NCBI GenBank assembly: GCA_050084985.1
Contig: JBITNC010000001.1
Span: forward strand, 19,034,001 to 19,098,000
Reading direction: 5' to 3'
DNA: 64,000 nucleotides
Source of the DNA: Nageia nagi
Taxonomy: Eukaryota; Plantae; Pinophyta
In this document: positions 19,531-39,537 of the stretch, piece after piece
Layout: each line of letters begins with the position of its first letter
How positions within the stretch are numbered: the first letter of the stretch is position 1
The notes under the pieces: model-generated
Databases searched by the model: none
What the model saw: the letters and a program-made list of their open reading frames with translations, nothing else
What the model was told of the DNA's origin: nothing
Made by a program: the position numbers and the translations under genes

Positions 19531-20749
19531 CCCTAAGAGCTCCTTTCATTATCTTAATATTGATTTTGAAATTAGTTTTTTTAAAGTTTCTCTCTATTAT
19601 TAGAATTCGACCTAAACTTAATTTCTTACTTCCTTTCTATTTGTCATGACTAAAATTTACCTTTTTAAACCTAAAATTTGATATATTTAATAACTTAACA
19701 TCCTTGGAGGCATCTTGAAAATAATTTTATATAATAAAATAATTAATATCCATGTTTCATGACTCTACTATGCATGTTACACTATGAAAGTTATTTTTGA
19801 TATGGTCAACTTATTATTCTTAGTTTCTTTGTAGATATTATTTTTGCATTATGTATCATCATTCCTATAACATGGCTATTTTCTCTACATGATAATAACT
19901 CATGATCTATATCTAGTTGATTGTTAAGTTGATGAGTGCTCCTTTACCTCACAATTATGGTTATTATATACTATGATAATCCTAGGACTATGGAAACATG
20001 AATGATTTGGTTACATGACTAATGTTCTCTTTATCCTTCCAAACATATTTGTATATATGGTTTTCTAATGTAGTTTATATCTTCTACATACTTTTTGATA
20101 AATGCTTATTCTTCCCTTGGACATGATTTTGTGACCCTTTAAATCTAACATAAGACATTGTTGGTATGATTTTTATTAGATTCATGGCCCATCTTTTATG
20201 AACTAGGAATTATCTAGATACTTCATAATAGTTATATTTTAGCCATGTGTACATCATGTATCTTAGGATGTTTGTATACATTTAACAAATCATAACAATT
20301 ATTAGTCTCTCTTGGTGGTGGATAGAATTTATTCTTTCTCTTCATTTGGTGCATCTTGTAGAACATCTTCTACTTTTTTTATCACTTGAGATAATTCATA
20401 AAAATATTTGGAGCTAAATGTCATTCTATTTGGAACTTAACATCCAAATATGTTGAATCCACCCTTTTTGGTGCATTTCCTAGCCTATAGATATCTTATG
20501 GCTCCTCCTCTACAAATACGCATCTAGTATGGCCTTCATTCCTCATGCCCCTCTCATGCAAGGTAAATTTTAATACCCCTTATCCTAAGGTTTTTTATAG
20601 AACATAAGGTGAATCCCATTTCACCATTTAGTGATTTTCATATAAAGGTGTTTCAAAATGAATGGGAATTATATTCCAAAAAAATGTAGATTTTTTTGCC
20701 AAAATTTTTCTACAAATTTTATTCTCATGAAAATAGATAAGTTTATGTA

Positions 20750-21060
20750 ATTGAATGGTTGCAAAATGAAACTTTTTGGTTATATAATGCAACCATCCAA
20801 TATGTTATAATAGTTTGATTACATGATACAACCATTTGATTGCATGTTACATTTTTTAGTTATAAGTTGTAACTATAACCAAATGGTTGCATGATGTAAC
20901 CAAGAAGTTGTAGTTCCAACTTAGAGCTATGAAGTTACATGGTACAACAATGTGACTAGGTGATTGTATGATGTAACTGAGAATTTGTAGTTACAACTTA
21001 GAGCTAGAAAGTTACATGGTGTAGCAATGCGATTGGATGATTGCATGTTGCAATGAAATG
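20750..21060. repeat. Array 1 of the 21-bp palindromic motif GGTTGCATGATGCAACC-ATTT, including an ~80-bp tandem duplication
   Basis: TTGCATGATGTAACCA at 20887-20902; ACATGATACAACCATTTG at 20821-20838. Confidence 0.8.
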
Positions 21061-22320
21061 TATATGTAATTAATGCCACAAGTGATATAATTTATAAATA
21101 GATGTGTTTGGTAATTTGTAACTCATTTTTTCTTGAGAATCACTTTAAGACATGTTAATTTGCTCCATTTCCTAGTCACTTTAATCCATAGTACCTATTC
21201 ATTCCAAGCCCTTTAAGGATACATCATATCTTATTTTTCCTCTAGATAAAAAATTACTTTCAAAACTTTTGTTCACCCTGGTATTTTGGTGGATCTTTCA
21301 CAACTAGATGTGCTCACAGATTATATAGTTAAGTTAGGACTTTGCATACTAATTTACATATCACAATTCGATATAGAAATAAGTATTTTGTACCTATTGC
21401 TATCTAGATATGACCAGTAGAAGGGCGTATTCACCATCAAAGTTTCATCCAATACTTTGGTCTATGAGATATATCCTACAAATATCAAGTGCCTCATTGG
21501 TATCCCAAACAACAAAGGAGGCAATGCAACCATTACACACAAATCTCTATTTGGTGACATGGAAAAGAAGTACCTTAAATCCTATTATGGTGTTTATTTG
21601 GATGTGCTTGGTAAATTTCTAAAATTACATTTTTAATGATTAATTCAATTGTATTATGATTCTAAATTATTTTTTATGTACTATTTTTAAAATTATATTC
21701 TAATGGGGGATTTATACTAGGGGGGTTATGTATAACAACATCAACAATAATTATTTAAAGTCAATCATGGAGTTTTTTTCTTAAATAATTATTTTGTAGG
21801 GAAAACTCAAAGAGTTACCATAGTGGGCATGTACTTATCTTGTCCATGTCCTTAATAGTACAAAATTTGATTTTTGTAGTTTTATTTTAAAAAGAATCTT
21901 AGTGATGCCATATCAAATATAACCAATTTTATTTTTTCCATGAATTTTATTATTGGATTTTATTACAAGGATTTTTATGATTTATTAAATGCACCTACTT
22001 TGACTTGCCTTTCCCTAATAATATGGAAAATTTTGTTGATAGTGAACTAGATACAAGTTGGTTCTTCCTTTATATTTTATTATTTTAATGAAAAGTTTGA
22101 TGTATAAGTTATTAATAATTTATTATTTTCATACATATAGAACAAACCTTTAGCAAGTGCAAAATGTGAGAGGTATCACTGAAGGGGTATTAATCTCTCA
22201 AAAGAGCATCAAATCTTAATGCAAAAGTTAATGATGCACAACCATTGTATAAAACCATAGATCCAAGAAGATGAGAAATTCACTCATACCACCACTTGTA
22301 TAAATAGTTAAAACTTGTAT

Positions 22321-25300
22321 TGTATATAACTAAAAATGAATTATTATTTATTAAATAATTCATTTTATAGCATCAAATAATATTTATTGTAAAAAGGGGT
22401 AAAATGTACCCAAGGCAAAGTAATCAATGTAATGGACTATTATATGATGTAAAGAGTGTAAAATATCAATAAAGACACCATAAACAATGTAATATGTAAT
22501 GATCCAAAGAATTAAAATATTATTATAAAATAATATCAAATGAAACACAATCGATAATGGGTGAGATAAGTGGAGAGCCAGAGGGAAGGATTAGAACATC
22601 ATTTCACCCAACCAACAAAGGTGTTTCATAACACCACCTATACTAGATTCGTTACACTCTTTATCTTACTTCATGCATTTCAATTTTTACTCATGGATCT
22701 ACATATTTTAGGTTGTTAACTATGTTTGTTATGTGTGGGATGTTATCATGTTTTATGCTTGATATATAATACTCTTTATCTTGTTCCACATACTTCAATT
22801 CATGCACATGAATCTACTTAATTCACATAGCCAACATTGTTCATTTCTTATAATATCATGGATTAGTAATTCAACTACTTATAGGTCATTAATGATTAGA
22901 AGGTAGGCATGTGATAGCTCATTTTGTATGTACTCAAAAAGATCTATTCATTTATGAGGTTTGTACATCAATTATGGATCACATATGGATTGTATTACTT
23001 CAAAAATATTATATTATATATCATATTAATGAATTATTTATTTAATTCATTATTTATAGAATACATTTTGGTGAACACAACTATTTCAATTAATCTTACC
23101 CTACTAGTGAGATCTCATGAGATTTATGTGAAGCATTAACATTGTTAGCAATGTGAAAAATGGATCAAACCCTAATGCAACTAGCCAAATTCATAAGTGA
23201 TCTATAGAAGTAGATAGATGCATTGCAAAGTTCAAATAACATCCATAATTATTCCCCACCACCTGATCAAGAGGCCTCCAAATTTGAGATGTTTAATAGC
23301 CATCATCCAAAGTTTATTTTGAGAGATTTCATTAAGAAGGGTTTATTACAACCATTAGATATAAGAGTAAAACATGATAGTGTTTCAATGGGAAATTCTA
23401 ATGCTTATTGTGTTTATCATCAAAGAAGGCATCATTCTACAAATTTGTTTAAGGCTTTGGAGGTTGCAATTTTGGATCTCATTGCACAAGAAAAATATGA
23501 GATTCATTAGCATGCTTTAGATTCAAAGATTCCAAAGAAAGGAATGGAAATATGTAGAATTGAGAAATTTTTGAATGAATATGATGAGAAATCATGCATT
23601 CAATGACATGCAATATTGCTTGTATGCAAACAATGGTGTGAAAATAATAATGAAGATGATGGTTCTTTCTTTGCATCATCATTCTCATCAAATCCAATTC
23701 CTTTAGTTAAGGAAACAGTAATGGAAAATCTATTTTCATATTCCTTTATGCAATAATACATGATTAATAGTTGTATAAGTGTTGAAAAATGTTTATAAAT
23801 ATCATATTTTCCTATTTATGATGATATTGATGATGAATCATGGTATAATGATGCTATTTCACTTAAGTTTGGTTGCTTTAATTTTGATGATATATTGGAG
23901 TACATGGGGTCATTATCTGAATTTCCTAACTCAAATGAGGAAGATGAGAAAGTAAATGAGATTTTAAGTTTGAATGGATCACTAGTTCTATTACAGAAAG
24001 ATGATGAATTGGTTTATTCAATTGAAAAATTGATTGAAGTTGAAGCTACTCTTCTAACACCATAGGAAACAAGGTACACAAACAAGTTTATTTAGAGTCA
24101 TAGTAATTTTGCAAGGTCTTATATCAATATGCTTAGTTTAGAACCTTATTTTTTCATCCATTATTCAGAATGGATGGTTCATATTAATAAGCTTATTGGA
24201 GGGATAAGAATTGATATTTTATCTCCAAATATTTATATTATTTTGGATAGTATTACTTTTTCTCTCATGGATGGATATAGTCAAACTATATTTCTAATGG
24301 ATTTTGAAAAAGAAGCATATCTTTATATATTAACACATTATATGCCTTAGGGGCAGTATTATTTTAGAAAGATGATGAAAGAGGGTACTCAATTATAGAT
24401 ATAATAGCAACAATCATTCATAATGATGGTAAAATAGTGCATAAAGAATTTTCATATGCATATGATGAGGAAACACATTTTTAATTATGTGCATTACTAT
24501 TTGCATGGTGTTAGGAGCATGTAAATAGCAACAAAAAAATAGCAAAAAAAAAAAGATAAAATATAAAAAGAATAGTATAATGTTTGTATACCATGGAAAT
24601 ATAAACATTACATCATAAATGGCCATCAATACGACTAGTGAGAGTTCACTCACTTAAAATATAAATCAACAATGCAATCATAAGTAGATTGCTAACATTG
24701 ACTCATCATCAATGGATGACACAAGTCACTATGTATCCAAAAAAAAATTGTTTATGGTATATCTAACATTTTTTATAGGTATTTACATCAAAATAAGAAT
24801 AATAACTAAATCAAAATTCATGCTATAAATTGTGTATGATACTTTTCATACACTATAAGTGGCATTCACATCAACAAACCTAGAGTTGAGATTAAAGGTT
24901 CTCTTCTGTATCAAGGCATGGATGTAAGAGCATTAGACTATTTAGTATTAGAAATGAAAGAATGGCTAGATACATGGTTGAACAATGTTAAGAGGAAAAA
25001 TAATCTCTTCTATTTTGAATATTGGATGTGGGACTATAAGACTATTTTGTAGCAGATTTCCTTCCATGGAAGAAATATAACAAGGGGAAAAAAGATACAA
25101 GTGTTTAGGTTTTTTCTTGGCTACACCACTCAAGGAGCTTTCCTAGGGAAACCAAGTAAAAATGGGGTAGAAAAGGACCCTCATCATCACATGATAGTGC
25201 TAGATGAAGAGTTCAAGGATTTTCAAAAAAATCCTTCTATACTTCTTCTTTGGATATGTAATTTCATTACTTCAATCACACCTCCAAACAAGGGCAAAAT

Positions 25301-26055
25301 GTAGATTCCTAAAAATAAATTATTATTTATTAAATAATTCATTATATAGCATCAAGGAATATTTATTGTAAAAAGGGGTAAAATGTACCTTAGGTGATGT
25401 AATAAATGTAATGGACCATTATATTATGTAAAGAGTGTCGAATATCAAGAAAGACACCACAAACAATGTAATATGCAATGATCCCAAGAATCAAACAAGA
25501 TCAAAATGTTGTTATAAAATAATATCAAAGGCAAAAAATTTGACAATGTGCAAGATTAGTAGAGAGCCAAAGGGAAGGATGAGAACATGTTTTCACCTAA
25601 CCAACAAAGGTGTTTTGTAACACCACATATCCTATATTTGTTACACCCTTAGTCTTACTTCATGCATTTCAATTTCTACTCATGGATCTACATATTTTAG
25701 GTTGTTATCAAAATTAATTATGCATGGAGATGTTATTTTATTTGAAGTTTGATTTGTAATACTCTTCATATTGTTCCACATACTTAAATTCATATATGTG
25801 AATCTACTTAATTCAAATAGCCATTGGTGTTTGTTTCTTATAATTTGATGGAGTGTTAATTCTATATCCTATACCTCATTGATGATCAAAAGGTAGGCAT
25901 GTGACCACTCATTTTGCATGTACATGAAAAGATCTATTCATTTATGAGGTTTGTTCATTAGTTATAGATCACATATGGCATGTATTACTTCAAACATATT
26001 ATATTGTATATCATATTAATAAATTATTTATTTAATTCATTATTTATAGTCTACA
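22321..26055 (+). mobile_element. Non-autonomous Tat/Ogre-like Ty3/gypsy LTR element (gag remnant only)
   Basis: LTRs at 22321-23065 and 25300-26055 (TGTA...TACA). PBS-like ttttggtgaacac after the 5' LTR. PPT aaacaagggcaaaa before 25300. Gag motif YCVYHQRRHHSTNLFKALEVAILDLI in ORF 23223-23510. TSD degenerate (TGTAT/TCTAC). Confidence 0.85.
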
Positions 26056-26294
26056 TCTACTTTCACAAGTATTTAATTATAAATATGTTTTTCATTCCTA
26101 ATGACATGGCATAGTAATAATAGTAGGGTATAAAAAAATTATGTTTTGATAGGAAGGGAATCAAGGGATAGAGAATTATATACAACTATTAGTTATGGTG
26201 ATGTTGGAAATAAGGAGATACAATAAGCCAAAGCCCCCTAGAAATAACAAACATAGCTAGAAGTGGAAGATACAAATTTCTTTTTTGGTGCAAC

Positions 26295-26550
26295 ATATTA
26301 GTTTTATCATGCTACCTATCAATTACATCATCTAGTAGTATCATACAACCAATTAGTTTCATCATGAAATTGACCAATTGCATCATGCAACTAGTTAGTT
26401 ACATCATACAACCAGTTGTTTGCATGAGGCAACTAACAAGTTGCATGATTCAATTGATTAGTTGCATGATGTAACCAAATAATTGCATGATGAAATTGAT
26501 TAGTTGTATATATATTGATTGCATAATGTTAATAATCAGTTGCATTGTAA
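26295..26550. repeat. Array 2 of the 21-bp palindromic motif (intron-like region of the PMD-like gene)
   Basis: About 11 decayed units; TTGCATGATGTAACCA at 26462-26477. Unit polarity switches near 26420. Confidence 0.8.
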
Positions 26551-26706
26551 AAAAACACATATTTGAATTACTAAATTTATTGGTAATAAATTATATCTTC
26601 TTATAGTTTCTCTTACAAATTCTTCTCTTGGATCTTGAAGAAGATCACCCATGGGTCCATTGATAATCCCATCCACAAGAATATTTCATAGAAAGAGCAA
26701 AGAGAT

Positions 26707-29700
26707 TATAGAGTTTCACAAAGTTACCAAACCTTAATTATACTCAAAATCTCAAATTCTAAGCTTACTATTTTATCTTTCATGTCTACTCTGAGAATTG
26801 TTTTCCTATAGATTGGCTATGTAACCGACCAATCAATTAGTCCTTCAATAAATCAACCTACTAGTTGGTATTAAATACTATATTTTATTGAAATTTGTTA
26901 TCTCTTCATTTCTTTCCCTCATTTTTCTTAGATTAGAATATGAAGTGAATAGTATAGGTTTCCCATGGCCTATAGAATGTATTTAGATCTTATTTAAACA
27001 TTTTGGTGTTGTTGGAGTGTGTTATCAATAATCAAATGCAAGTTTATGGTATTGTGTGAACTATGAACATCCATTGATGAATGAATCCTACCTTTGAGTT
27101 ACAGAACCATTTTGAGCTTTGAATTACTTATGTAAATAAATTTATTATTTGTATTAAATAAATTCATTTGGTATCAGAGCTTTGTTGGATCATATTGGAT
27201 TTAAGAATTTATCCAAGAAGAGAAGATAAGGCATGGCAAGCAACTCAAAAGTAATCCCCATTCTAGATTTTGATGAGAGTGACTATGAGTACTGGAGCAT
27301 TCAAATGAAGATTATCCTAAAGGGAAGAGGCTATTGGGATATTATATAGGTTGGATACAATGATCTAACTAATTGGAGTGCCTTAAGTACATATGTAAAG
27401 AAGGATGCAAAGGAGAAAGAGAAGTAGAAATCCATGGCTCTCTCCTTAATCCAAGAAGCTATGGACAAGAGCATTTTTCCCAAAATTTCTACTTGTATAT
27501 TAGCCCAATAAGCATGGGAAACATTGAGAGAAGGCTAACAAGGGAGCCTTAAGGTGAAAGAGGTGAAACTATAAACATTGAGAAGAGAGTTTGAGAAATT
27601 GAAGTAGAAAGAGAAGGATACTGTTGGAGATTATTATGTAAGAGTGAAAGCCATAGTTATTATAATGGCCACTATTGGGGAGAAGATAAAGGAGGTTTTC
27701 ATCAATAAGGTTTTAAGAACCTTAATTTAGAGGTATGATCATCCTAAACTTATTATTGAAGAAACAAATGATTTCTCAACCATGGAAATTGACCATTTAG
27801 TTGGCTCTCTTACATCACATGAAGAGAGAGTTTTGAAGAGAATAAAAATAGTAAAAAGCATTAGTGATGGGAAATCATTCTCCATCAAAGAGAATGAAGG
27901 ACAAGGTAGATGTTCAACAGGAAGAGTCAGATCCAAAAGAGGTGGAAGGAGAGGCTCATTTGGAATAGGAAGATAATAGAGTGCATAAAATGAATTACCA
28001 TATGCATCAAGGAGGAGACACTCTGGAAGAGGAGGTAGAGGTAAAGATAAGAGGAATTTGCAATATTTTTATTACAATAAATTTATCCATCTTGAGTATA
28101 AATGCAAGATGAAATAAGCACATGAAGGTAAATCATCCCACTATGGAGAAGAAGAGCATGGATATGGTGAAGAATAGTTATTTCTTCCAATTGCAGTCCC
28201 TCAAAAGCTTGAAGATGAAACTTGGATCTTGGATAGCAGGTGCACAAATCACATGATCTATGAACAATCTTTACTCAACTCTATTTATTACTCCTCTAGT
28301 TCAAGTGTGAGGTTGGGATATGAGAAGAGCTTGAAGATTATTGGAAAATAAGATATGCAAGTTCCAAAAAATAAGGGAACTATGAAGGTGAAAGACATTT
28401 ATTATGCTCCATATCTAAAATAAATTTTATCAAGTATTAACCAAATACTAGAAAAGAACTATAAAATGGTGTTTGAGGATAAGATATGTAAAATTTGTGA
28501 TAAAAACCATGTTGAAAGGCTTGTTACTACTATTCATGTGATTGTAAATAAACTCTTTCTAGTAAAATTTCTTAAAAAGGATGGAGGCTTTTTATTTGTG
28601 GAAATTGAAGATAAAAATGCACTTTAGCATATGAGGCTTGGACACTTGAATTTTCATAGTTTAAAAACTCTTCCATCAATGGCAAGAGAGTTTCCACAAG
28701 TAGAAGATTGTAAAGATATGTGTGAAGGATGTGCACTTTGAAAATAAGAAAGGAGAAAATTTCCAAAGGAAGAAGCATGGAGAGCCAAACACCCTCTCTA
28801 ATTGGTCCATAAAAAGATTTGTGGGCCTATAAAAACTCAAATTTTTGGTAAATCTTCTTACTTTAGCACTTTAATTGATGATTTCACTAAAATGTGTTGG
28901 GCTTATTTCATCAAGAGAAAGGATGAAGCATTTGAATGTTTTAAGGAGTTTTAAACTTTTGTTGAAAAGAAAAGTGGGTGTAATGTGAAGTGTTTGAGAA
29001 GTGATAAAGGATTATAATATTGTAAGAATGAATTTTTTTAGTTTTGTAAAGAGAATGGCATTAAAAGATACCTTAACTCTTCCTACACCCATAACAAAAT
29101 GGTGTAGTAGAAAGAAAAAATAATAAATTGGTTGAGATGGCTATAAGTGTGATGCAAAGTAAGAAATTGTACAATATTTATTGGGTTGAAGTAGTAAGAA
29201 TAATTATGTACCTTTTGAATAGGTCTCCTACAATAATCTTGGATAAAATTACCCCTATGAAGCTAGGTTTGAAAGAAAAGCAAATTTGCAACACTTGAGA
29301 CTATTTGGTTTCCTTGCATATGTACATGTAAATGATGAAAATAGGAGGAAGTTGGATGCAAAATTTGAATCTTATTATTTTATGGGATATTATGAGCATT
29401 CAAAGGCTTATAAATTCTATAATTCTAAGACACAATATAATTATGTCTTGAGATGCCATTTTTTATGAAGGGGGAGAGTATTGTAATAAAAAACTTATAG
29501 TAAAAAGTGGTTGTAGATGAGATTTTGAAGGAGATAACATCATAAATAGTGCATCCCAACCATGCTATGACTTAGAAAAATAAATAACAACCATCAAGTA
29601 TGAGTGTTCCAAGCTCACTAAGACCCTCTAGCTCCACCACAACACTAACAAGTATGAGTGCACCAAGCTCACCCAATGCAAGGATGAAGAATTAAGGTAA

Positions 29701-31874
29701 TAAAGGTAAGATATGGTTGAAGGATCACCCATAAATTAAAATCATAAATGGTAATAGTATGAGGATAATTATAAGGATCCAAAACCAAGAAGTGCAAAAT
29801 CTACTCACAAGGCTAGAGAACATTCAGTTTTATGGAGATGAAGATAGTGGAGAGACCAAAGAAGAAATGGCAACTATTATTGATATATATTGTTATAAGA
29901 AGCTTGTTCTAATGTTGTTTGGATCCAAGCTATGAAAAAGGAGAATTATGCTATTAAGAGAAATGATACTTAGGAACTTTGTGAGTTACCCAAAGGTAAA
30001 AAGGTTATTGGTTCCAAGTGGTGTGTAAAACAAAATGTAAGAGTGATGGGAGAATTGAAAAGTACAAAGAAAGGCTAGTGGTAAAAGGATTCACATAGTA
30101 TTATGGTGTGGATTTTGAGGATAAATTTGCACCTATTGAAATACAATAAATAATAAGATTATTTCTCTCTTTGGTTGCAAGCAAAAGTTTGATAATACAA
30201 CACATGGATGTAAAGAGTGCCTTTCTCAATGGGTACATGTATGAAGAGGTGTATGTAGCACAATCTCAAGGATTTTATATTAAAGGAAGATAATACCATG
30301 TGTACAAAATCAAGAAGGAATTATATGTGCTAAAGCAAGCTATAAGAGCTTGGTACATAAGAATTGATAGATACTTCAAAAGTGTGGGCTTTAAAAGAAG
30401 TGTAAGTGATCCTACCTTATATTTTAAGAAAGATGGATTTGATATTTTGATTATTTATTTGTATGTAGATGATTTGATATTCATGGGAAGTAATAGCAAT
30501 ATGAATGATGATTTCAAAACTCAAATGATGGTTGAGTTTGAAATGAAGATCTTGGTCTGATGAGCTACTTCCTTGGCTTAGAGGTCAATCAAACAAAGAA
30601 GAGATACTTGTGTCACAATCCAAATATACACATGATATGCTAAATAAGTTCAAAATGGAGAATTGCACACCTATTTCAACACCTATAGCACATGGGTAAC
30701 ATATTTTCAAAGAATATAGAGCACCAAAAGTGAATAAGAAAGAGAATAGGAGCACTACTAGAAGCCTCATATTTTTAACAAACCAAATGCCAAATTTACA
30801 ATTCAATGTTTCATTAGTTGCAAGATACATGAGTGATCCATAAACTATCCATGTCAAGGAAATGAAAAGAATCCTTAGATATATTAAGGGAATAATCAAT
30901 TTTGGAATAAATTATACATGTTATTCCAAGTTCAAACTCATAGGTATTAGTGATAGTTATTAGGGAAATGATTTGGATGATAGAAAGAGAATAAGTGGGA
31001 ATTGATTCTCTCTTCAATTAGGTTTGATATCATGGACCTCAAGAAAATAATCCATTATATCTCTTTCAAGTACTAAGGCTAACTATGTAATTGTGACAAG
31101 TGATTCAACACAAGCTTTATGGTTGAGGAAGGTTTGAAGGATATTGGAGAGGAAAAAAAATATGAAATTACCATTTTTTATTACAACCAAGGTGCCATTA
31201 AGATAGCATAAAACCCTTTCCATCATTCTAGAAAAGAGGATTTAATTTTTAAGACTAATTTCATCCAATATTTTATGGACAAGGTTATAGTAAAATTAAA
31301 GTATTGTCCAACACAAGATCAAGTGGCTAATATAGTCACTAGATTTATGGCAAAATCTCAATTTGTATTACTAATAGACTTAATTGTTAGTCCTCTTATC
31401 AAAAAGGGGAGTATATAGAGTTTCATGAAGTTACCAAACCTTAATTTTACTCAAAACCTCAAATTGTAAGCTTAATATTTTATCTTTCATATCCACTTTG
31501 AGAATTGGTATCCTGTAGATCAGTTGTGTAATCAACCAACTAGTTAGTCCTTCATTCAATTGGCATGTTGGTTGGCACTGAATACTACATTTTATTAAAA
31601 TTTGTTGTCTCTTCATTTCTTTTACTCATTTTTTGCTTAGAGTAGAATATGAAGTGAATAGTCTAGTTCTCCCATGACTTGTAGAATGTATTTAGATCTT
31701 ATTTCAAGGTTTTGGTGTTGTTGGAGTGTGATATCAATATCAAATGTAATTTTATGGGGTTTTGTAAACTATAAGAATCCATTGATGAATGGATTCTATC
31801 TTTGAGTTATAGAACCATTTTGAGCTTTGAATAACTTGTGTAATTTATTTTATTATTTGTATTAAATAACTTCA
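26707..31874 (+). mobile_element. Full-length, decayed Ty1/copia LTR retrotransposon
   Basis: LTRs at 26707-27166 and 31414-31874. Perfect Met-PBS TGGTATCAGAGC at 27169-27180. PPT AAAAAGGGGAG at 31401-31411. TSD GAGAT/GATAT. Confidence 0.95.
27233..31390 (+). pseudogene. Copia gag-pol (gag, protease, integrase, RT, RNase H) with many stops and frameshifts
   Basis: MASNSKVIPILDFDESDYEYWSIQMK; WILDSRCTNHM; LVHKKICGP; HLRLFGFLAYVHV; [11 protein letters not shown]; LYVDDLIF; YCPTQDQVANIVTR. Confidence 0.95.
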
Positions 31875-33644
31875 GATATTATCCACTCTAGCATAAAAAA
31901 AGTAGGCCAACTTAGACTTTGAACATTTCTTGTTTTGAATTCCCTAGTCTTAATCTTGATAATGTATGCAATGCAAGCATTGAGGTACTAAACCACATAG
32001 ACCTTGATGTAGAATACTTAGGTATTGAGAGCAATCCTACTCCATTTGATAGTTTTCAATAATATGAGGTAATTTAGAGATACTCTATGCAATAGCCTAC
32101 CCAACCATCTCAACATATGGTTCAAACTCTAGCAGTTCTAACATAAAATGCATCCAATGCAAAAAATGAGATGAAAAAATTATTCTTAATCATCTTATTA
32201 GTGATAATTTTCTCCAAAATATTTAAGGAATGTTACTCAATGACATTTAAATATTGAAGGATGAAATCAAAAGTAGATATGATAACTAAATTCCTAGCAT
32301 ATATCATTGTACTCAAAAATTGAAAATTAATTAATGAAGATTCATATTAAGGCTCTTTTCAATCAAATCAAGTCAGGTCTGATTTCTATTTCCAATTAGT
32401 ATAATTATTGTGTTCTTGATGTATGTCTAGATATACTTGAGAATATGAATAGTGAAGCACATTCCTATTTTGACAAATGGACAAATGTAGAGAAGGAGAA
32501 AGCATAGATACCTTTTTAGTTATAACTTTGTTCAAAAAATATAATTTTTTATAATTTTATAATACAATTTAAAAAAATAAATAAATTTTATTTTGTTGTA
32601 AGCAAAATATGAAAAATTGAATAATAATGTCCAAGTCCTTAACCTCCATTTGAAAAAAGCAAAGAAAATTATTTTAGTGCAATTGAGCTTAAATAAGATA
32701 TGGTAAAATTGAATCAAATGAACAACATGTTGAAGCTCATTATTAAAGAACATAGAATAAATATTGATATATTTTGGAATGAAAAAGTTGTAGCATAATT
32801 AGTATTTGTCTCACTAGGTGATGTTGCAAGGGAAGAGAGGGAGACTTATGCAAATCTTAACTTTATCATAGAAGACCTAGTCAATTTAGGGATTTTAGGT
32901 GATAGTATCAATTTAGACTAGAATTTCATTAGGTATAGTTACACTCTTTTTTATCATGTTGGATAATATTTTCATATTTATTTTATGTGGAACAATGTCT
33001 TCAATGGTGAATTAAGTGAATTGATGTGATGTTTGAGTTAATATTTGACAATATTTTGAGTCAATTGATGTGATGTTGAGTTTGAGTGAATTGATGTTTA
33101 ATATCTAGAAGTTATGGATAATATTATTAATAATATTTGTTTAGAAAAATGAATTTATATTTTGATAATATTATTTTTTATTGTAAATTTTGGATAATGT
33201 TATGTTATTTCAAATGTATTGAGCATTTTACATATTTTGTTAGCAAAGTGCAATTAGATGGTTGTAGTATGCAACTATTTACTTATGTAATCCTAGGTTA
33301 AATGGATTTGAAAATATATTTATATAATAAAATTATAAGACTGCAATATCTTTCATGTATAAAAAATATGTTCAAAAATATAAAATATAAAATTTTTCCA
33401 ATCACATTATCACATAATTTCATATATTCAATAATAAAATTTTAAAATACTACCAATCACATTATCACATACCATAAGATATTAAAGAATATAACTATTA
33501 AAAGAACTACCATTTGGGGTATCACATACCATAAAATTACAAATATTATACTTGAATGTGACAAGTTACATTCTATTAAAAATAATTGTAATGAAACATA
33601 GGCATAGGCTAAAATCTAGATAATTGAAATAGTTGCTTGGAACT

Positions 33645-36600
33645 CTAATCATCAGTTATATTGATCATGTTTGGCTCTTCTGTAATAGTACATATATTTA
33701 CATTTGTACCATTAGTTATGGATTTTGTACCTTTTAAACCTCTCCATTCTACTAAATATCTCCATCTAGCCATAGCCTTGTCCATTGGAAAATTATCCAT
33801 AGAATAATATAAAACATTCAGTTGTAAACAAGCATCCAAATTCTTTTCTAATATATTACAAATTTTTTATTTAATAAAGGATTTTGCATTGAATACTCTT
33901 TCATCTTCCACAAATCTAAGAATCATTATCTAAAATAATTCATACAATAAAAAAATACTCATTTTATCTTGTAGCATATTGCTTGGATAAAGTTTGTTTC
34001 ATAGATGAGTAATAGCACCCGCCTCTAATGATTCTGTTAAGTATGCATATTTATCAACCATTGTAATTCTAAAATTATTTGATTATTTCATTAATAAATC
34101 CTTTTATATGATTCCATACATATTGACACTATTTACATTAATAGATTTACTAAAATGTGAGGTCAAAGTTTTCATATACTTGTGAAATAATGAAGTTATA
34201 TATTTTTTGATAAATGATAGGATTCCAAATCGAGGATTGATAATACCCATGGCCTCAAGAAAATCATCTTGTAGGAAATAATCTTGAACCTTTTATGATA
34301 ATTTATTTGAAACCTTTATCAATTTTATTTTTTTCATGATATAAAATAATCAAAGTGAGTTTTACCTACTTTAATCTATTTATATTTTACTCTAACTAAA
34401 TCCAATCTTTTATCATAGACATACAAAGGTATATCTCTATCTTTAACATGGATGCAAATATGATCATGTATATCAAATTTCAAATAGTTTTTAGGATTTT
34501 AAATATCTATCAATATTCACCATTTCTCAAAGTGTGGTTTTCCTATATTTATCCTTTGACACATATAACATATCTAGAGATTGAAAAACTCTTTTTCTCA
34601 TATATATAAAATCAACTATGTATATTGACCTTTGTTAAGCATGTTTCACCAAGTTGTATATATCCTCCAACATTGGAATTAATACACTTAAATTCAATAA
34701 AGTTTATAAATCTATCAAATTTTCTAATATATATTTTGGTTTATCAACTTTTCTTCTATGTTGAAACATAAATTTTATCAAATATTGACACTCATCTAAA
34801 ACTTTGCATGCAAGGTCATACAATGAGACCCATTTTTATTAACATCTTTAATATGCTTTTTTCCATCTATTATTTTAGATACAAAATTTTGAAACTCTTT
34901 ATATCATTTCAAGCTACTAGTTATGTAAACATGCAACTCTCGAATAGGACATATTCCACATTTCTACGTGATCCTCAATACTTAAAATTTTATGTGCACA
35001 ATTGATTTTATTTTTCATGCAATGTATAGGGATAATATATGGAGAAATTATTTATTGTAATCATAAATAAAGATTATTTTGGTTACCTTTAATTACTGAG
35101 GCACCATCACCACCAACACATAAGTTTTTATGTAATTGATGAATCATCCATTTCAAAAATGTTCTTCAAAATTGAAATAACTAACTTATACAAGTTTTAT
35201 ACAACTTTAAGTGGAATTTACATCATTCAAAGGGTTTTCAAGTGAAATGTAACAAAAGTATGCATGTATCATAATAGAAGTGTAATCACAAAGTAATAGA
35301 AGCACGTGCAAATTATTTTAGAAGAGTGACAGGTTATTATTAAGAAAATTATAGCTTAGCAAAGCTACAATATTTCTAAAATGCAATTGAATGATATTCA
35401 AAATGCGATGAATAAATCAAATTATGACCTGATCCAAATCCCCCCAAGGAATGGAATAGCATTTTGATGTAGAAAAAACCATTCATAGATGAGGTGATTG
35501 GGATGGTATTGGAGCCTGAGTATATTGATTCCAAAAAGTATTACAGAGAAGGAAGAGGATGGGCTAAAAGCAGCCCTTGTTGATCTTTTTTTTTTGGTAT
35601 GACCCCCTCTAGATATGATTTGAAGTTGGATGAAAGTAACATGGAGCACAAAAGGGTGGGTATCCCTAGTTGCTCTTCTAAGAGAATTTCTATTATTCAA
35701 ATTCTAGCTTGATGAAGACCTACAAAAAGTGATAGAGATGGTTCTATGGTTCCTTGGAAAGAAAGGATTAGTCATAAAGAGATGGGAGAAAATATTCTCC
35801 TCTGAAAGTGAAAATTTCAACTCATTCCAACATGGATCTCTCTACCCAAAATTCATCCATTCGGTTGGCATCCATGTGTAATAGTTGTAATTATGAAAGC
35901 AATTAGATCCCTTATCATAATTGAGCAATCAACAAGATTGAAACTTAAGCTTATAGATGCAAGATTCATGGTTAATTTAGATATTTTCAAACCTCTGATG
36001 AAGGAGACAAAATTAAAAATAGAATATTAGAGAGAATGGATGCAATTATTTGGATATGAAAATCTACCATTACAATGTGGAATTTGTAAGAGTTATGAGC
36101 ATTATGTAAAGGATTTCCAAGAAAAGAAGAGGAGGGATAAAGAAAAGAGAAAAAAAGAAAAAAATGAAAAGGAGTCTCAAGATAAATAGAAATAAAAAGG
36201 GTGAAAATTAATAAAGAAATAAAAAATAGGAAAAAATCAAAATAATATCATCAAAATGCAGACAAAACAAACCATATCATAAAAATAATCAACTTCAAAA
36301 TAAGTTCAACAAAAGAAATCAACCATAGCAAACTTGTATGCAATGTTAGCAATTTTAGGAGTAGAAAGACAAGAAATGAATTATAATATAGATTTTTCAA
36401 AAGAAGAGACCAAAAATATGGAATTTGTGGAAGAGGAAGATGAAGAAAGATTAAGGAGGGTGACAAAAAAGAGAGGAATGCAAGTATTCAAGCAACAACA
36501 ACACAACAACAAGAAGACCAAGATGGAATCCCATCAAGAAATATATTGAACTCTAGAAAAATAGCAAATGTTGGATAAAGACATGTAGGGATATCATCCC

Positions 36601-38300
36601 AAAGAGATAATAGAGAAAAACTCACCAAACTAGATATAGTGAATGAAAAGCAATCAACTCTACATCAAATTAACAAATCTCAATCCACATTTGGGTTGAA
36701 TAAAAGATTTTTTAATTAGAATATTCTAGTAGTAAAGAGGTAGTTGGGTTGTATCTCAGTTGTGATTCATATCTATTTTGAATTCATTTTGATGATTTTA
36801 TATTAATACAATTTGAAAAGTAGGTTTCATTGGGGCTACTCATAGGTTATAGTTGGGTAGCATTTGAACTTATTTTGTTAATAGTTTTTTGCAAATTATA
36901 TTAGCTACCACTAGGTATAGTTGGGTAGTGGTTTCCTATTTTGAAAATAATTTTGTGACCAATTTTTTTATGGTTCAAACAAAAACCATCACCAATTTTT
37001 GATAATATAATTTACTCTCATTATAAAAAAAAAAAAACTTATACAAGTTTCATGCATTGCAATTATTTTTCATTTTATCAAAGATAATAAATGTGATTGT
37101 ATACTATGATTCTCAAAAGTCTATACATGCATACAAAATCATGATGTGTTATCCATTGAAGTAACTTAATCAATAGAGAGTGAAATAAAATATGCTTTTT
37201 GAACTTTTTTTAAAGCTTCTTTTTCAACTTTTGCAAGATAAGTTACAATTTCCCATGCACTAGTCTTAGAGCAATGTGATAGTGGAATGTTATTTACACC
37301 AATGTATTGATATAAATTCATATAACCTATAAAGTATGTTATCAATATTCCATTCTTCAATATGTGTAGTATAGTATAGAACTTGGTAGAAATATACATT
37401 TTTTTCTATCAATTGAGAATCCATTACCTTCACAAGTTGTGTAGATATAGTCCCACCTTTTTGATTGAGTTCTTCTTTTTCTTTGAGAAACTTATCATGT
37501 TTTTCTTTATACTTATTATGATTACACTCTTTATCTATTTTTTATCTCATTAACTCCACTTCTTTCCATCCTTTTCTTTTCCTATATAATAAATTTTTCC
37601 ATATTGTTTGTCTATGGTATCCAATTTTAATTGTATTCAATGTTCTCTACCAAGTTTCTAAGTACATATCATGCACTTACAATCAGTTGGTTTGCTACCA
37701 TATTCTTTGGTAATTAGTTAAATAAAAGGATATTTTACCACACAATCAAACTAAAAATTCCTTCCTAGTGTCCATCTACTTCTGTTCTTATGTTTTGTTT
37801 CTTGAGAGGATAGTTCAATTTTGACTATCTTTTCAGAATTTTTTGGAATACCATATACTGAATTTTGAGAACTATTGACATTTAGAATGATATTTCATTT
37901 ATGATATTTTTTATTTCTTTAGAATATATTTTGATTATCTTAATATCATTTTGAGGAATATATTCTACTGGTGGCATTTCCTCATCAAATTCATCTTCTT
38001 TATATGCCACATTAATACTTTCCAATGATAGAATACTATCATCAAGTCAATATTTTAAAAATAGAAAGAAAAAATATTTTATTTATATTTCTTGAATAAA
38101 ATATAAATATAATATGGATTATGAAATAAATATAATTTTATATTAAATGACAAACTTGTAAGATTAAATACTTGACAATGTTTAAGAAATAACTAACTAG
38201 AAAATTATAATACTTTGTACTTGGAATTGTATTTTCTGATGAGGGTTGAGAAACATTTTATTTTGGTTGGTCAAAATATGATAATATTCCCTTATTTTAT
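33645..38300 (-). pseudogene. hAT transposase pseudogene (ZNF862-like), split by the ORF1-only L1 insertion
   Basis: Minus strand: N-terminal KYPFI..CKCMIC zinc-finger-like region; AWEIVTYLAKVEK..FISLSID*VTSMDN (first catalytic D); LCVGGDGASVIKG (second D); IHCMKNKINCA (CxxH region); DVN/xWVSLY (TRW region); hATC dimerisation segment FVEDERVFNAKSFIK*KICNILEKNLDACLQL..FPMDKAMARW. Confidence 0.85.
35198..37035 (+). mobile_element. ORF1-only L1-clade (HAL1-like) retroelement, copy 2, with both ends present
   Basis: Perfect 15-bp TSD AACTTATACAAGTTT at 35183-35197 and 37036-37050. Poly(A) at 37025-37035. ORF1 remnant with WFLGKKGLVIKRW and YENLPLQCGICKSYEHYVKDF (~35410-36700). No ORF2. Confidence 0.9.
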
Positions 38301-38728
38301 TTTCTATTATCATATTTCTTATTAGATTTATTTGACTCTATTATACCTATTGAAAATAATTCATTTTGCTTTTTTATTTATTTATAAAATTGATAATATT
38401 ACAAAATTGAAAAACATCAATGGTTTGTATGATTCAACTATTTGGGTACATGATAAAACCATTTGGTTTTGCTATGTAATTATTTAGTTGAGAAACATTT
38501 TATTTTGGTTGGTCAAAATATGATAATATTCCCTTATTTTATTTTCTATTATCATATTTCTTCTTAGATTTCTTTAACTCCATTATACCTATTGAAAATA
38601 ATTCATTTTGCTTTTTTATTTATTTATAAAATTTATAATATTACAAAATTGAAAAACATCAATCGGTTGCATGATTCAACAATTTGGGTACATGATACAA
38701 CCATTTGGTTTCATAATGTACTTATTTA
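38245..38728. repeat. 242-bp tandem duplication at the 5' end of the hAT transposase gene
   Basis: Near-identical blocks starting gttgagaaacattttattttgg at 38245 and 38487. Confidence 0.9.
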
Positions 38729-38980
38729 GTTATATGATACAATCATTCAGTTGCATGATGTAATTGAATGGTTTCATGATGCAATCATTTGATTTATGAT
38801 GCAACTATTTGGTTGATCATGCAATCATTTAGTTGATGATGCAACTAAATGATTGCATGATGTAACCATTTGATTCCATCATATAACTAAATAGTTGCAT
38901 GATCGATTGTATTGTGCAACCAAATGATTGCATCATATAACCAAATGGTTGCATTATGCAATAAAATAATTGCACAATAT
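38660..38980. repeat. Array 3 of the 21-bp palindromic motif, upstream of the transposase (a duplicated portion also lies at ~38420-38486)
   Basis: About 15 units; ACATGATACAACCATTTG at 38690-38707; TTGCATGATGTAACCA at 38853-38868. Confidence 0.85.
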
Positions 38981-39537
38981 AAGTATTATTATACTCGAAC
39001 CATATAATAAGTTTATTTGAGATCGAAATGATAAATTCTATAATCTAATTTGTGGTAACTTTCTAAAGTTAAAGGCATATAATTTTTTAGTGAGTCAACC
39101 CTTGTAATTTAAAAAATATAGAAAATTTTGGTGATTTTGCACTCATCTTGTACTCTCAAAAATTGTTAATTCAAAATTTGGAAATCCTAAAATTTACTTA
39201 TAATCAATGATTCATGGCTAAAATTTTTCCTACTCTCATGTCTTTGATAGTCCACCTATACCTCTATTATTATTTTTTAAAAACCCTAAATATTTTAATT
39301 TTTGGTAACTTTCTAAAGTTTTGCAAAATAGCTATTTGTTTATTTTTTAAATTAAATATATCTTTATTTTTTAATATAGGTTGGAGGCCCCAAAATTTTT
39401 AATATTTTTCTTTTTTTGAACTCAACAAATTTTGTTTTATAATGAGTATTAAAGGTCAAATCGATATTTCATTAGCTTCAAAGAGTTCGTCATTCCATCT
39501 CGATTGAAATGAGTAGTGGCATGACCTACTTTGTCTT

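What the first reader, a model, noticed from the sequence alone, without database searches (positions are those of the whole stretch)
20358..39529. Candidate hAT transposon carrying a spliced PMD-like accessory gene plus arrays of its own palindromic motif (VANDAL/VANC-like layout in another superfamily)
Seen: removing three nested retroelements (22321-26060, 26707-31879, 35198-37050) leaves about 8.4 kb. It holds a plus-strand, intron-containing PMD-like gene convergent with a minus-strand hAT transposase. Both ends show imperfect inverted similarity and a candidate 8-bp TSD. One 21-bp motif is arrayed in the 5' intron-like region of the PMD gene, in one of its internal introns and upstream of the transposase. 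Established: hAT elements typically encode only a transposase and make 8-bp TSDs. PMD (PF10536) is described from Mutator-like and Ty3/gypsy elements and from the domesticated silencing factors MAIN/MAIL1. Arabidopsis VANDAL MULEs encode VANC accessory proteins that act on short motifs tandemly arrayed in the element's own non-coding regions. Inference: this may be a hAT family that acquired a PMD accessory gene, with the arrays as cis-targets of a chromatin or anti-silencing function. I do not know of a described hAT-PMD association but cannot search for one. This copy is dead.
Basis: partly seen in the sequence, partly recalled or inferred. Interest (0 to 1): 0.85.

Follow-up and report, generated by a model that had tools for sequence, protein, structure and literature searches.

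The report
Dead hAT transposon with palindrome arrays
This is a long-dead cut-and-paste (hAT) jumping gene, split by three later retroelement insertions, that carries three arrays of its own 21-bp palindrome and about 4 kb of extra DNA; the claim that this extra DNA encodes a PMD-type second gene could not be confirmed in this copy.

Summary
Confirmed: three nested retroelements, which leave about 7.9-8.4 kb of host element. Confirmed: a single-exon transposase on the minus strand (about 38.1 kb to 33.63 kb). It has about 45 in-frame stops and is split by an L1-like insertion. It is homologous (E 2e-53 and 2e-29) to intact 886-915-aa proteins whose predicted fold matches the hAT transposase Hermes (E 2.7e-10). 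Confirmed: three arrays of one 21-bp palindromic unit (tGGTTGCAT-S-ATGCAACCa), 25 core matches against 0.45 expected, found nowhere else in the 64 kb.

Not confirmed: the proposed ends at 20358/39529. Their TSD matches 5/8 and their inverted similarity is at chance level. A better but still non-significant candidate is 20559/39232, with a perfect 8-bp TSD (CTCTCATG) and CAAGG/TAGGA ends.

Not confirmed: the PMD label. Forty plus-strand pieces gave no PF10536 or PF09331 hit, and two Atlas and two homologue searches were blank. These tests have little power on so decayed a copy.

Earlier notes of this scan report the same two-gene hAT layout at many other places in this genome.

Verdict: a real, unusually large hAT element with unusual phased arrays. 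A second gene is plausible. Its PMD identity is unproven.

The parts
20551..20558 (.). Candidate left target-site duplication, CTCTCATG.
   Evidence: Identical 8-mer at 39233-39240. The 8-mer occurs 5 times in the window against 1.6 expected. The pair's combined score is within the shuffle null, so this is a candidate only.
20559..20575 (+). Candidate left terminal inverted repeat, CAAGGTAAATTTTAATA.
   Evidence: Matches the reverse complement of 39216-39232 at 10/16 positions without gaps, and about 14/19 by eye with gaps. It starts with a YARNG-like pentamer. Not significant, and not recurrent in the window.
20745..21054 (.). Array 1 of the 21-bp palindromic unit: about 8 units, partly organised as a 77-bp higher-order repeat (20884-21037).
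21250..21633 (+). Longest near-open plus-strand frame (128 codons, one stop). This is the putative first coding block of a second gene and is unverified.
   Evidence: No Pfam, Atlas or homologue hit. The PMD-like pattern is by eye only.
22321..26060 (+). Nested non-autonomous LTR element, including one TSD copy.
   Evidence: LTR pair found; TG..CA-type ends.
26302..26552 (.). Array 2 (internal): 11 units at exact 21-bp spacing.
26707..31879 (+). Nested Copia-type LTR retrotransposon, including one TSD copy.
   Evidence: LTRs 26707-27166 and 31414-31874 are 84% identical; primer-binding site TGGTATC; TSD GAGAT/GATAT. gag/integrase/RT-like ORF pieces were seen by eye.
31880..33632 (+). Remaining non-transposase DNA between array 2 and the 3' end of the transposase. 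It contains a second motif resembling PMD by eye (32799-32918) and a 55-bp tandem repeat (33371-33534).
   Evidence: No family hit on either strand.
33633..35197 (-). 3' part of the hAT transposase gene, including the C-terminal ...VEDERVFN... block.
   Evidence: tblastn with the L003/L004 proteins, E 2e-53 and 1.5e-59, one frame, 30-31 stops.
35198..37050 (+). Nested L1-like element (ORF1 only) with poly(A) tail and a 15-bp TSD.
   Evidence: Also noted by the scan as s1-860293.
37051..38100 (-). 5' part of the hAT transposase gene. It is aligned up to 37825; the N-terminus is not alignable and the start is estimated.
   Evidence: tblastn E 2e-29, 14 stops. The 79-aa piece 37169-37405 hits 5 fragments, best E 1.5e-12.
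38245..38731 (.). 242-bp tandem duplication (94% identical) upstream of the transposase, carrying array units.
38425..38985 (.). Array 3: about 17 units, 5' of the transposase and next to the right end.
39216..39240 (-). Candidate right TIR (reverse complement TAGGAAAAATTTTAGCC, 39216-39232) followed by the candidate TSD CTCTCATG (39233-39240).

Best explanation
A decayed autonomous DNA transposon of the hAT superfamily, from a divergent plant lineage whose distant relatives carry DUF4371 and the hAT dimerisation domain. After it died it was hit by two LTR retrotransposons and one L1.

Shown: it once encoded a single-exon transposase of about 870 aa with the Hermes-type fold. It also carries three phased arrays of one 19-21-bp palindrome.

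Inferred: the arrays are platforms for a dimeric, sequence-specific DNA-binding protein. The exact 21-bp spacing equals two helical turns and puts all sites on one face of the DNA. Two arrays lie 190-250 bp inside the candidate ends. There they most likely work like the subterminal repeats of Ac, Hermes or En/Spm, by collecting the element's own protein so that the two ends are recognised and paired. Each array also lies 5' of a coding or putative coding block, so they may also act as promoter-proximal control or anti-silencing sites. My odds for the binder are: the transposase's N-terminal zinc-finger region about 40%, a second element-encoded protein about 35%, a host factor about 25%.

The roughly 4 kb beyond the 3' end of the transposase is cargo that ordinary hAT elements lack. 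It probably held at least one more gene on the plus strand (about 55%). Its family is not established.
For: Transposase: E 1.5e-12; E 2e-29 and 2e-53 to the L003 ORF; single frames, 44-45 stops. One search finds relatives in ferns, Taxus and Ginkgo, and distant hits carry PF14291 and PF05699. In one search, PF05699 matches 3 of the 16 aligned relatives. One search shows the invariant DE.T, C..H..NL and RW.S blocks; the AF2 model has pLDDT 69.9, and the top 10 Foldseek PDB matches are all Hermes transposase (E 2.7e-10, probability 1.0, TM about 0.6 relative to the target).

Arrays. There are 36 units, spacing is 21 bp, the consensus is palindromic, and there are none elsewhere in the window.

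Nesting.

Size and cargo: coordinates, set against the usual hAT size of 2.5-5 kb (PMC3942097).

Candidate ends: (perfect 8-bp TSD).

Leads only, not checked here: scan notes s1-844033, s1-847865 and s1-855819 describe the same convergent two-gene layout in other copies.
Against: The ends are not proven. The best TSD+TIR pair scores 18, within the shuffle null of 17-20, and the terminal motif does not recur. No second copy was available, so mobility as one unit is inferred.

No tool detects a second gene. A 128-codon frame with one stop is expected about 0.1 times in this region by my rough estimate, which is only weakly significant. AT skew at 20-22 kb has the sign seen on the antisense side of the transposase.

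The intact relatives L003 and L004 share only the ORF itself, with no second gene or arrays. Typical hAT subterminal repeats are short (5-6 bp) and irregular, not 21-bp palindromes, and an internal array is not needed for end recognition.
Confidence: 0.65

Rival explanations
1. This hAT family acquired a spliced PMD (or DUF1985-like) accessory gene, convergent with the transposase. Its protein binds the element's own palindromic arrays to counteract silencing, as in the VANDAL/VANC system or the PMD-C/motif modules.
For: There is about 4 kb of cargo on the correct side. Arrays lie at internal as well as subterminal places. By eye, 21330-21530 and 21690-22010 read in the order of PMD blocks (my reading from memory). 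PMD-C proteins associate with specific motifs, one of them palindromic, and resemble the DUF1985 domain of VANC (10.1101/2024.09.27.615353). Scan notes report a PMD-like gene in other copies (unchecked).
Against: None of 40 plus-strand pieces gave a PF10536 or PF09331 hit, even at E up to 10. The Atlas and homologue searches were blank. One follow-up of this scan found no relation to PMD/VANC (s1-860654). PMD is described from angiosperms, in MULE fusions and Gypsy elements (PMC5418596), whereas the relatives of this transposase are in ferns and gymnosperms.
Confidence: 0.15
2. Two elements of one family lie side by side or nested. One is a short non-autonomous derivative, from the left end to just beyond array 2, with arrays 1 and 2 as its two subterminal arrays. 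The other is an autonomous element that kept only its right array. On this view the internal array is not internal.
For: Arrays 1 and 2 bracket only about 2.2 kb of host DNA. A terminus would be expected about 200 bp beyond array 2, close to the Copia insertion point.
Against: No terminus-like sequence and no CTCTCATG-type TSD lies near 26550-26706 or 31880-32100. Three arrays rather than four are present. No flank similarity was found next to array 2. Scan notes describe three arrays in single copies of a related family (s1-844033, unchecked).
Confidence: 0.1
3. There is no second gene. The extra 4 kb is non-coding filler or captured host fragments, the plus-strand ORF pieces are chance, and the arrays are satellite-like expansions of a transposase-binding site.
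For: All searches on plus-strand pieces were blank. Minus-strand control pieces gave the same kind of chance hits. Stop density in the proven transposase frame (about 6%) is close to background (about 8%), so frame length carries little information here.
Against: The same blank result is obtained for pieces of the proven transposase, so the tests lack power. Independent notes on other copies report a conserved spliced gene (unchecked).
Confidence: 0.25

Closest known systems
hAT superfamily transposons (Ac, Hermes; DUF4371-bearing lineages)
   Same: The transposase relative has the Hermes fold, the DE.T / C..H..NL / RW.S / ..ER.FS blocks are present, the transposase is a single ORF, there is a candidate 8-bp TSD and short imperfect TIR, and repeats lie just inside the ends.
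   Different: It is about 8 kb instead of 2.5-5 kb. About 4 kb of non-transposase DNA is present. The repeats are 21-bp palindromes in exactly phased tandem arrays. A third array is internal. Pfam does not recognise the transposase or its closest intact relatives.
VANDAL21 MULEs with VANC (DUF1985) and its arrayed target motifs (Arabidopsis)
   Same: Short motifs are arrayed in non-coding parts of the element, including internal ones, and the element has more than one gene-sized block.
   Different: The superfamily is different (hAT, not Mutator). No DUF1985 or PMD hit was obtained. Binding and hypomethylation are untested.
En/Spm (CACTA) TnpA and its 12-bp subterminal motif arrays
   Same: Dense arrays of one motif lie in both subterminal regions, in both orientations. 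In En/Spm they are bound by a non-catalytic element protein that pairs the ends and also affects methylation (from my own knowledge).
   Different: The superfamily is different, there is no CACTA terminus, the unit here is a full palindrome, and there is an internal array.
MuDR (mudrA and mudrB, convergent)
   Same: Convergent two-gene layout, if the second gene is real.
   Different: Long TIRs and a 9-bp TSD are absent here, and the transposase has a different fold family.
[quoted passage not shown]
   Same: The idea of a PMD protein working through a specific, partly palindromic DNA motif (10.1101/2024.09.27.615353).
   Different: Those are host genes acting on host promoters. The motif sequences are not given in the text I could read, so no comparison was made. 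PMD identity is unproven here.

Membership tests
hAT superfamily | Transposase with an RNase-H-like catalytic core interrupted by an all-alpha insertion domain (Hermes-type fold). | tested here: met
   Tested on the intact relative L003 (33% identical to the window gene, E 2e-53). The AF2 model gives Hermes transposase as the top 10 PDB matches, E 2.7e-10, probability 1.0.
hAT superfamily | C-terminal hAT dimerisation region (PF05699). | tested here: inconclusive
   There is no Pfam hit on the window pieces or on L003/L004. PF05699 is found in 3 of the 16 aligned relatives. links L003 to P0020-22, which carry PF05699 in the precomputed annotation, at E 3.6e-10 to 4e-5. The ..VEDER.FS.. block is visible in the window at about 33900.
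hAT superfamily | 8-bp target-site duplication. | tested here: inconclusive
The candidate 20551-20558 / 39233-39240 matches 8/8, but the pair is not distinguishable from chance.
hAT superfamily | Short (10-25 bp) terminal inverted repeats. | tested here: inconclusive
   No significant inverted similarity. The candidate CAAGG... / TAGGA... ends match 10/16 ungapped and do not recur in the window.
hAT superfamily | Multiple genomic copies sharing ends and layout. | not testable with these tools
Only one run held a small share of the words. Only unchecked scan notes report other copies.
PMD (PF10536) | Profile match of the encoded protein to PF10536. | tested here: not met
   Tested exon by exon only. 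Forty plus-strand pieces of 24 aa or more gave no PF10536 hit at E up to 10. Power is low.
DUF1985 (PF09331) / VANC-like | Profile match to PF09331. | tested here: not met
   The same scans gave no hit.
VANC-like anti-silencing system | The accessory protein binds the arrayed motif and causes local loss of silencing marks. | not testable with these tools
   This needs binding assays and methylomes of a species with live copies.

The most novel reading that the evidence does not exclude
A hAT lineage, apparently old and with relatives outside the angiosperms, is a true multi-gene transposon. Besides the transposase it carries a DNA-binding accessory protein of the PMD/DUF1985 fold class. That protein recognises the element's own 21-bp palindrome, which is arrayed at both ends and 5' of each gene. 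This would be a VANC/TnpA-like self-recognition and anti-silencing module that arose independently in a third transposon superfamily.
Probability: 0.15. Interest if true: 0.8.

Novelty: new variant of a known kind. Interest (0 to 1): 0.4.

Why it matters
hAT elements are treated as single-gene transposons of 2.5-5 kb. A hAT lineage with about 4 kb of conserved cargo and phased arrays of a long palindrome at its ends and inside would add hAT to the superfamilies (CACTA, Mutator, PIF) that use a second protein. If the cargo is PMD/DUF1985-like, it would give an independent origin of a motif-guided anti-silencing module. That bears on where the plant PMD silencing factors came from. This copy cannot settle the question, because it is too decayed. 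It does show the layout and the arrays clearly, and the scan has flagged the same layout repeatedly in this genome. The family, rather than this copy, deserves a proper consensus-based study.

Tried and rejected
1. Pfam on 10 transposase pieces, 10 and then 40 plus-strand pieces and 30 minus-strand control pieces gave only chance hits.
2. ESM Atlas on two plus-strand pieces gave no usable hit.
3. The search for homologous proteins on two plus-strand pieces found no candidates. Its length window excludes full-length PMD proteins in any case.
6. Flanks of the metagenome relatives L001-L005 were compared with the non-transposase part of the window. Nothing is shared. L003 and L004 share only the ORF.
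7. Scans of viral contigs with the transposase and with the palindrome found nothing relevant.
8. A self-comparison of host segments found no internal paralogy apart from the arrays.
9. The codon-position composition test was dropped, because the proven transposase itself shows almost no signal.
10. No PMD reference protein could be obtained, so no tblastn of PMD against the window was possible.
Full report
WHAT IS THERE

The window is extremely AT-rich (about 27-30% G+C) and fully decayed. It has no ORF of 110 aa or more anywhere in its 64 kb.

- An LTR pair at about 22321-23066 and 25300-26056 encloses 2.2 kb without recognisable genes.
- A Copia-type element at 26707-31874 has 84% identical LTRs, the primer-binding site TGGTATC and the TSD GAGAT/GATAT.
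- An L1-like element at 35198-37050 has a poly(A) tail and a perfect 15-bp TSD. The scan had already noted it as s1-860293.

THE TRANSPOSASE

Pfam found nothing on ten minus-strand pieces. A full HMMER search of 1.84 billion representatives with the 79-aa piece 37169-37405(-) gave five short fragments, best E 1.5e-12.

A metagenome scan with their alignment fetched five loci. Two of them (L003, L004) hold intact single ORFs of 886 and 915 aa. tblastn of these ORFs against the window aligns residues 95-342 to 37825..37073 and residues 374-843/887 to 35129..33711/33633. The E-values are 2e-29 and 2e-53 at about 33% identity. Each part lies in one frame, with 14 and 30-31 stops. So the gene is a single exon, killed mostly by point changes, and split at 35197/35198 by the L1.

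This Pfam copy does not recognise L003 or L004. Three results nevertheless place the family in hAT.
- Their homologues occur in ferns (Ceratopteris, Adiantum), Taxus and Ginkgo. More distant hits carry DUF4371 and the hAT dimerisation domain.
- The alignment keeps the DE.T, C..H..NL and RW.S blocks.
- An AlphaFold2 model (pLDDT 69.9) has Hermes transposase as its ten best PDB matches (E 2.7e-10, probability 1.0).

The hAT assignment therefore stands, for a divergent lineage.

L003 and L004 are 85% identical over the ORF only, with dN/dS 0.43 and no shared flanks. They show no arrays and no second gene, and their flanks share nothing with the window.

THE ARRAYS

The 21-bp unit is real and specific. 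The core TTGCATGATGCAAC has 25 matches (up to 2 mismatches) against 0.45 expected, all of them in three places.

Thirty-six units give the consensus tGGTTGCAT-S-ATGCAACCa. This is a 19-21-bp palindrome with a G/C centre. Spacing is almost always exactly 21 bp.
- Array 1 (20745-21054) is partly organised as a 77-bp higher-order repeat.
- Array 2 (26302-26552) is internal.
- Array 3 (38425-38985) lies upstream of the transposase and overlaps a 242-bp tandem duplication.

Each unit holds one TGCATG/CATGCA core. Its density is 12.9 per kb in the arrays against 0.9 per kb elsewhere. From memory, this is the RY/Sph element bound by plant B3 factors. I list that only as a lead.

Each array lies 5' of a coding or putative coding block.

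THE ENDS

Local alignment of the left flank against the reverse complement of the right flank scores 25, against a shuffle mean of 25.3. The pair 20358/39529 has a TSD of 5/8 and a TIR of 7/16.

A systematic scan for an 8-bp TSD plus TIR gave 20559/39232 as the top pair. It has a perfect TSD, CTCTCATG, and ends CAAGGTAAATTTTAAT and TAGGAAAAATTTTAGC. These begin like hAT ends and place the outer arrays a symmetrical 190-250 bp inside. Its score (18) lies within the shuffle null of 17-20. The TSD word occurs five times in the window, and the terminal motif is not enriched. I offer it as the better candidate, at about 55%, not as a result.

THE SECOND GENE

About 4 kb lies beyond the 3' end of the transposase: 20.56-22.32, 26.06-26.71 and 31.88-33.63 kb.

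The best plus-strand feature is a 128-codon frame with one stop at 21250-21633. By eye, it and the next pieces read in the order of PMD blocks, and a weaker similar motif lies at 32799-32918. That reading rests on my memory of PMD sequences.

Every tool test was blank:
- Pfam on 10 and then 40 plus-strand pieces, at E up to 10, gave no PF10536 or PF09331 hit.
- Two Atlas look-ups gave no usable hit.
- Two word-indexed homologue searches found no candidates. These cannot see full-length PMD proteins in any case.

Minus-strand control pieces behaved the same way. Pieces of the proven transposase also gave no Pfam hit. Stop density in the transposase frame (about 6%) is close to background (about 8%), and codon-position composition is nearly flat. 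These tests therefore have little power on this copy.

The joined step was left out.

OTHER COPIES

I worked beside those places afterwards and sent none of their letters to a search tool.

The scan's own notes list at least 14-17 places in this genome described as hAT elements of about 7.7-8.7 kb with a convergent spliced second gene. Three follow-ups accept a second gene (s1-844033, s1-847865, s1-855819). One of these reports three related 26-bp arrays in a sister family. One follow-up (s1-860654) found no relation to PMD/VANC. These are unchecked leads. They do mean that this finding is not new to the scan.

HOW IT MOST LIKELY WORKED

Shown: a Hermes-fold transposase and phased palindromic arrays near both candidate ends.

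Inferred: the arrays bound a dimeric, sequence-specific protein on one face of the DNA. At the ends this would collect the element's protein and help pair the ends. From my own knowledge, subterminal repeats do this for Ac and Hermes transposase and for En/Spm TnpA.

The long palindromic unit, the strict phasing and the internal array are unlike ordinary hAT subterminal repeats and closer to the VANDAL or En/Spm situation. This keeps an accessory-protein or regulatory role open. My odds for the binder are: transposase zinc-finger region about 40%, a second element protein about 35%, a host factor about 25%.

COMPARISON AND NOVELTY

hAT elements are described as 2.5-5 kb with 10-25-bp TIRs and 8-bp TSDs (PMC3942097). 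PMD is described from MULE fusions and Gypsy elements in angiosperms, and that paper has no occurrence of hAT (PMC5418596). A survey of active plant TIR elements reports PMD only in MURA-type transposases (PMC12973397). PMD-C proteins act through DNA motifs, one of them palindromic, and resemble the DUF1985 domain of VANC (10.1101/2024.09.27.615353). My two literature searches for a hAT/PMD or hAT/second-ORF association found none.

The element is best filed as a new variant of a known kind: a hAT element with large cargo and unusual arrays. The PMD part is unproven.

Scores: interest 0.4 for this dead single copy. The family would rate higher if step 2 of the next steps succeeds.

Noticed in passing
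window 20745-21054, 26302-26552, 38425-38985: Every 21-bp unit contains one RY/Sph core (TGCATG/CATGCA). Density is 12.9 per kb in the arrays against 0.9 per kb in the rest of the window. From memory, this is the binding site of plant B3-domain factors (ABI3/FUS3/LEC2/VAL), so a host factor could be the binder.
   Followed up: partly
L003:2326-4983 and L004:1088-3832 (metagenome contigs): These are intact 886- and 915-aa hAT-fold ORFs that this Pfam copy does not recognise. They are 85% identical at the DNA level over the ORF only, with dN/dS 0.43 and no shared flanks or TIRs. They are either a live lineage with very short ends or a domesticated transposase gene. Relatives occur in ferns, Taxus and Ginkgo.
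   Followed up: partly
window 38245-38731: A 242-bp tandem duplication (94% identical) upstream of the transposase copies part of array 3.
   Followed up: no
window 33371-33534: A 55-bp tandem repeat (2.9 copies) lies just beyond the 3' end of the transposase, in the space between the two convergent blocks.
   Followed up: no
window 22321-26060: A 3.7-kb LTR element has LTRs of about 745 bp and a 2.2-kb interior without recognisable gag/pol. It is probably a non-autonomous (LARD/TRIM-like) element. Its LTRs are only 78-89% identical, so the insertion is old.
   Followed up: partly
window 1-64000: There is no ORF of 110 aa or more on either strand in the whole window. Stop density in a proven coding frame (about 6%) is close to the background of about 8%. 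ORF length and codon statistics are therefore nearly useless for gene finding in this genome region.
   Followed up: yes
L001:1547-2438 and L002:655-1546: Two nearly identical AT-rich (30% G+C) metagenome contigs hold a decayed fragment of the same transposase family. It is interrupted by a K/E-rich, LINE-ORF1-like sequence. They probably come from plant DNA of a similarly AT-rich genome within environmental samples.
   Followed up: no
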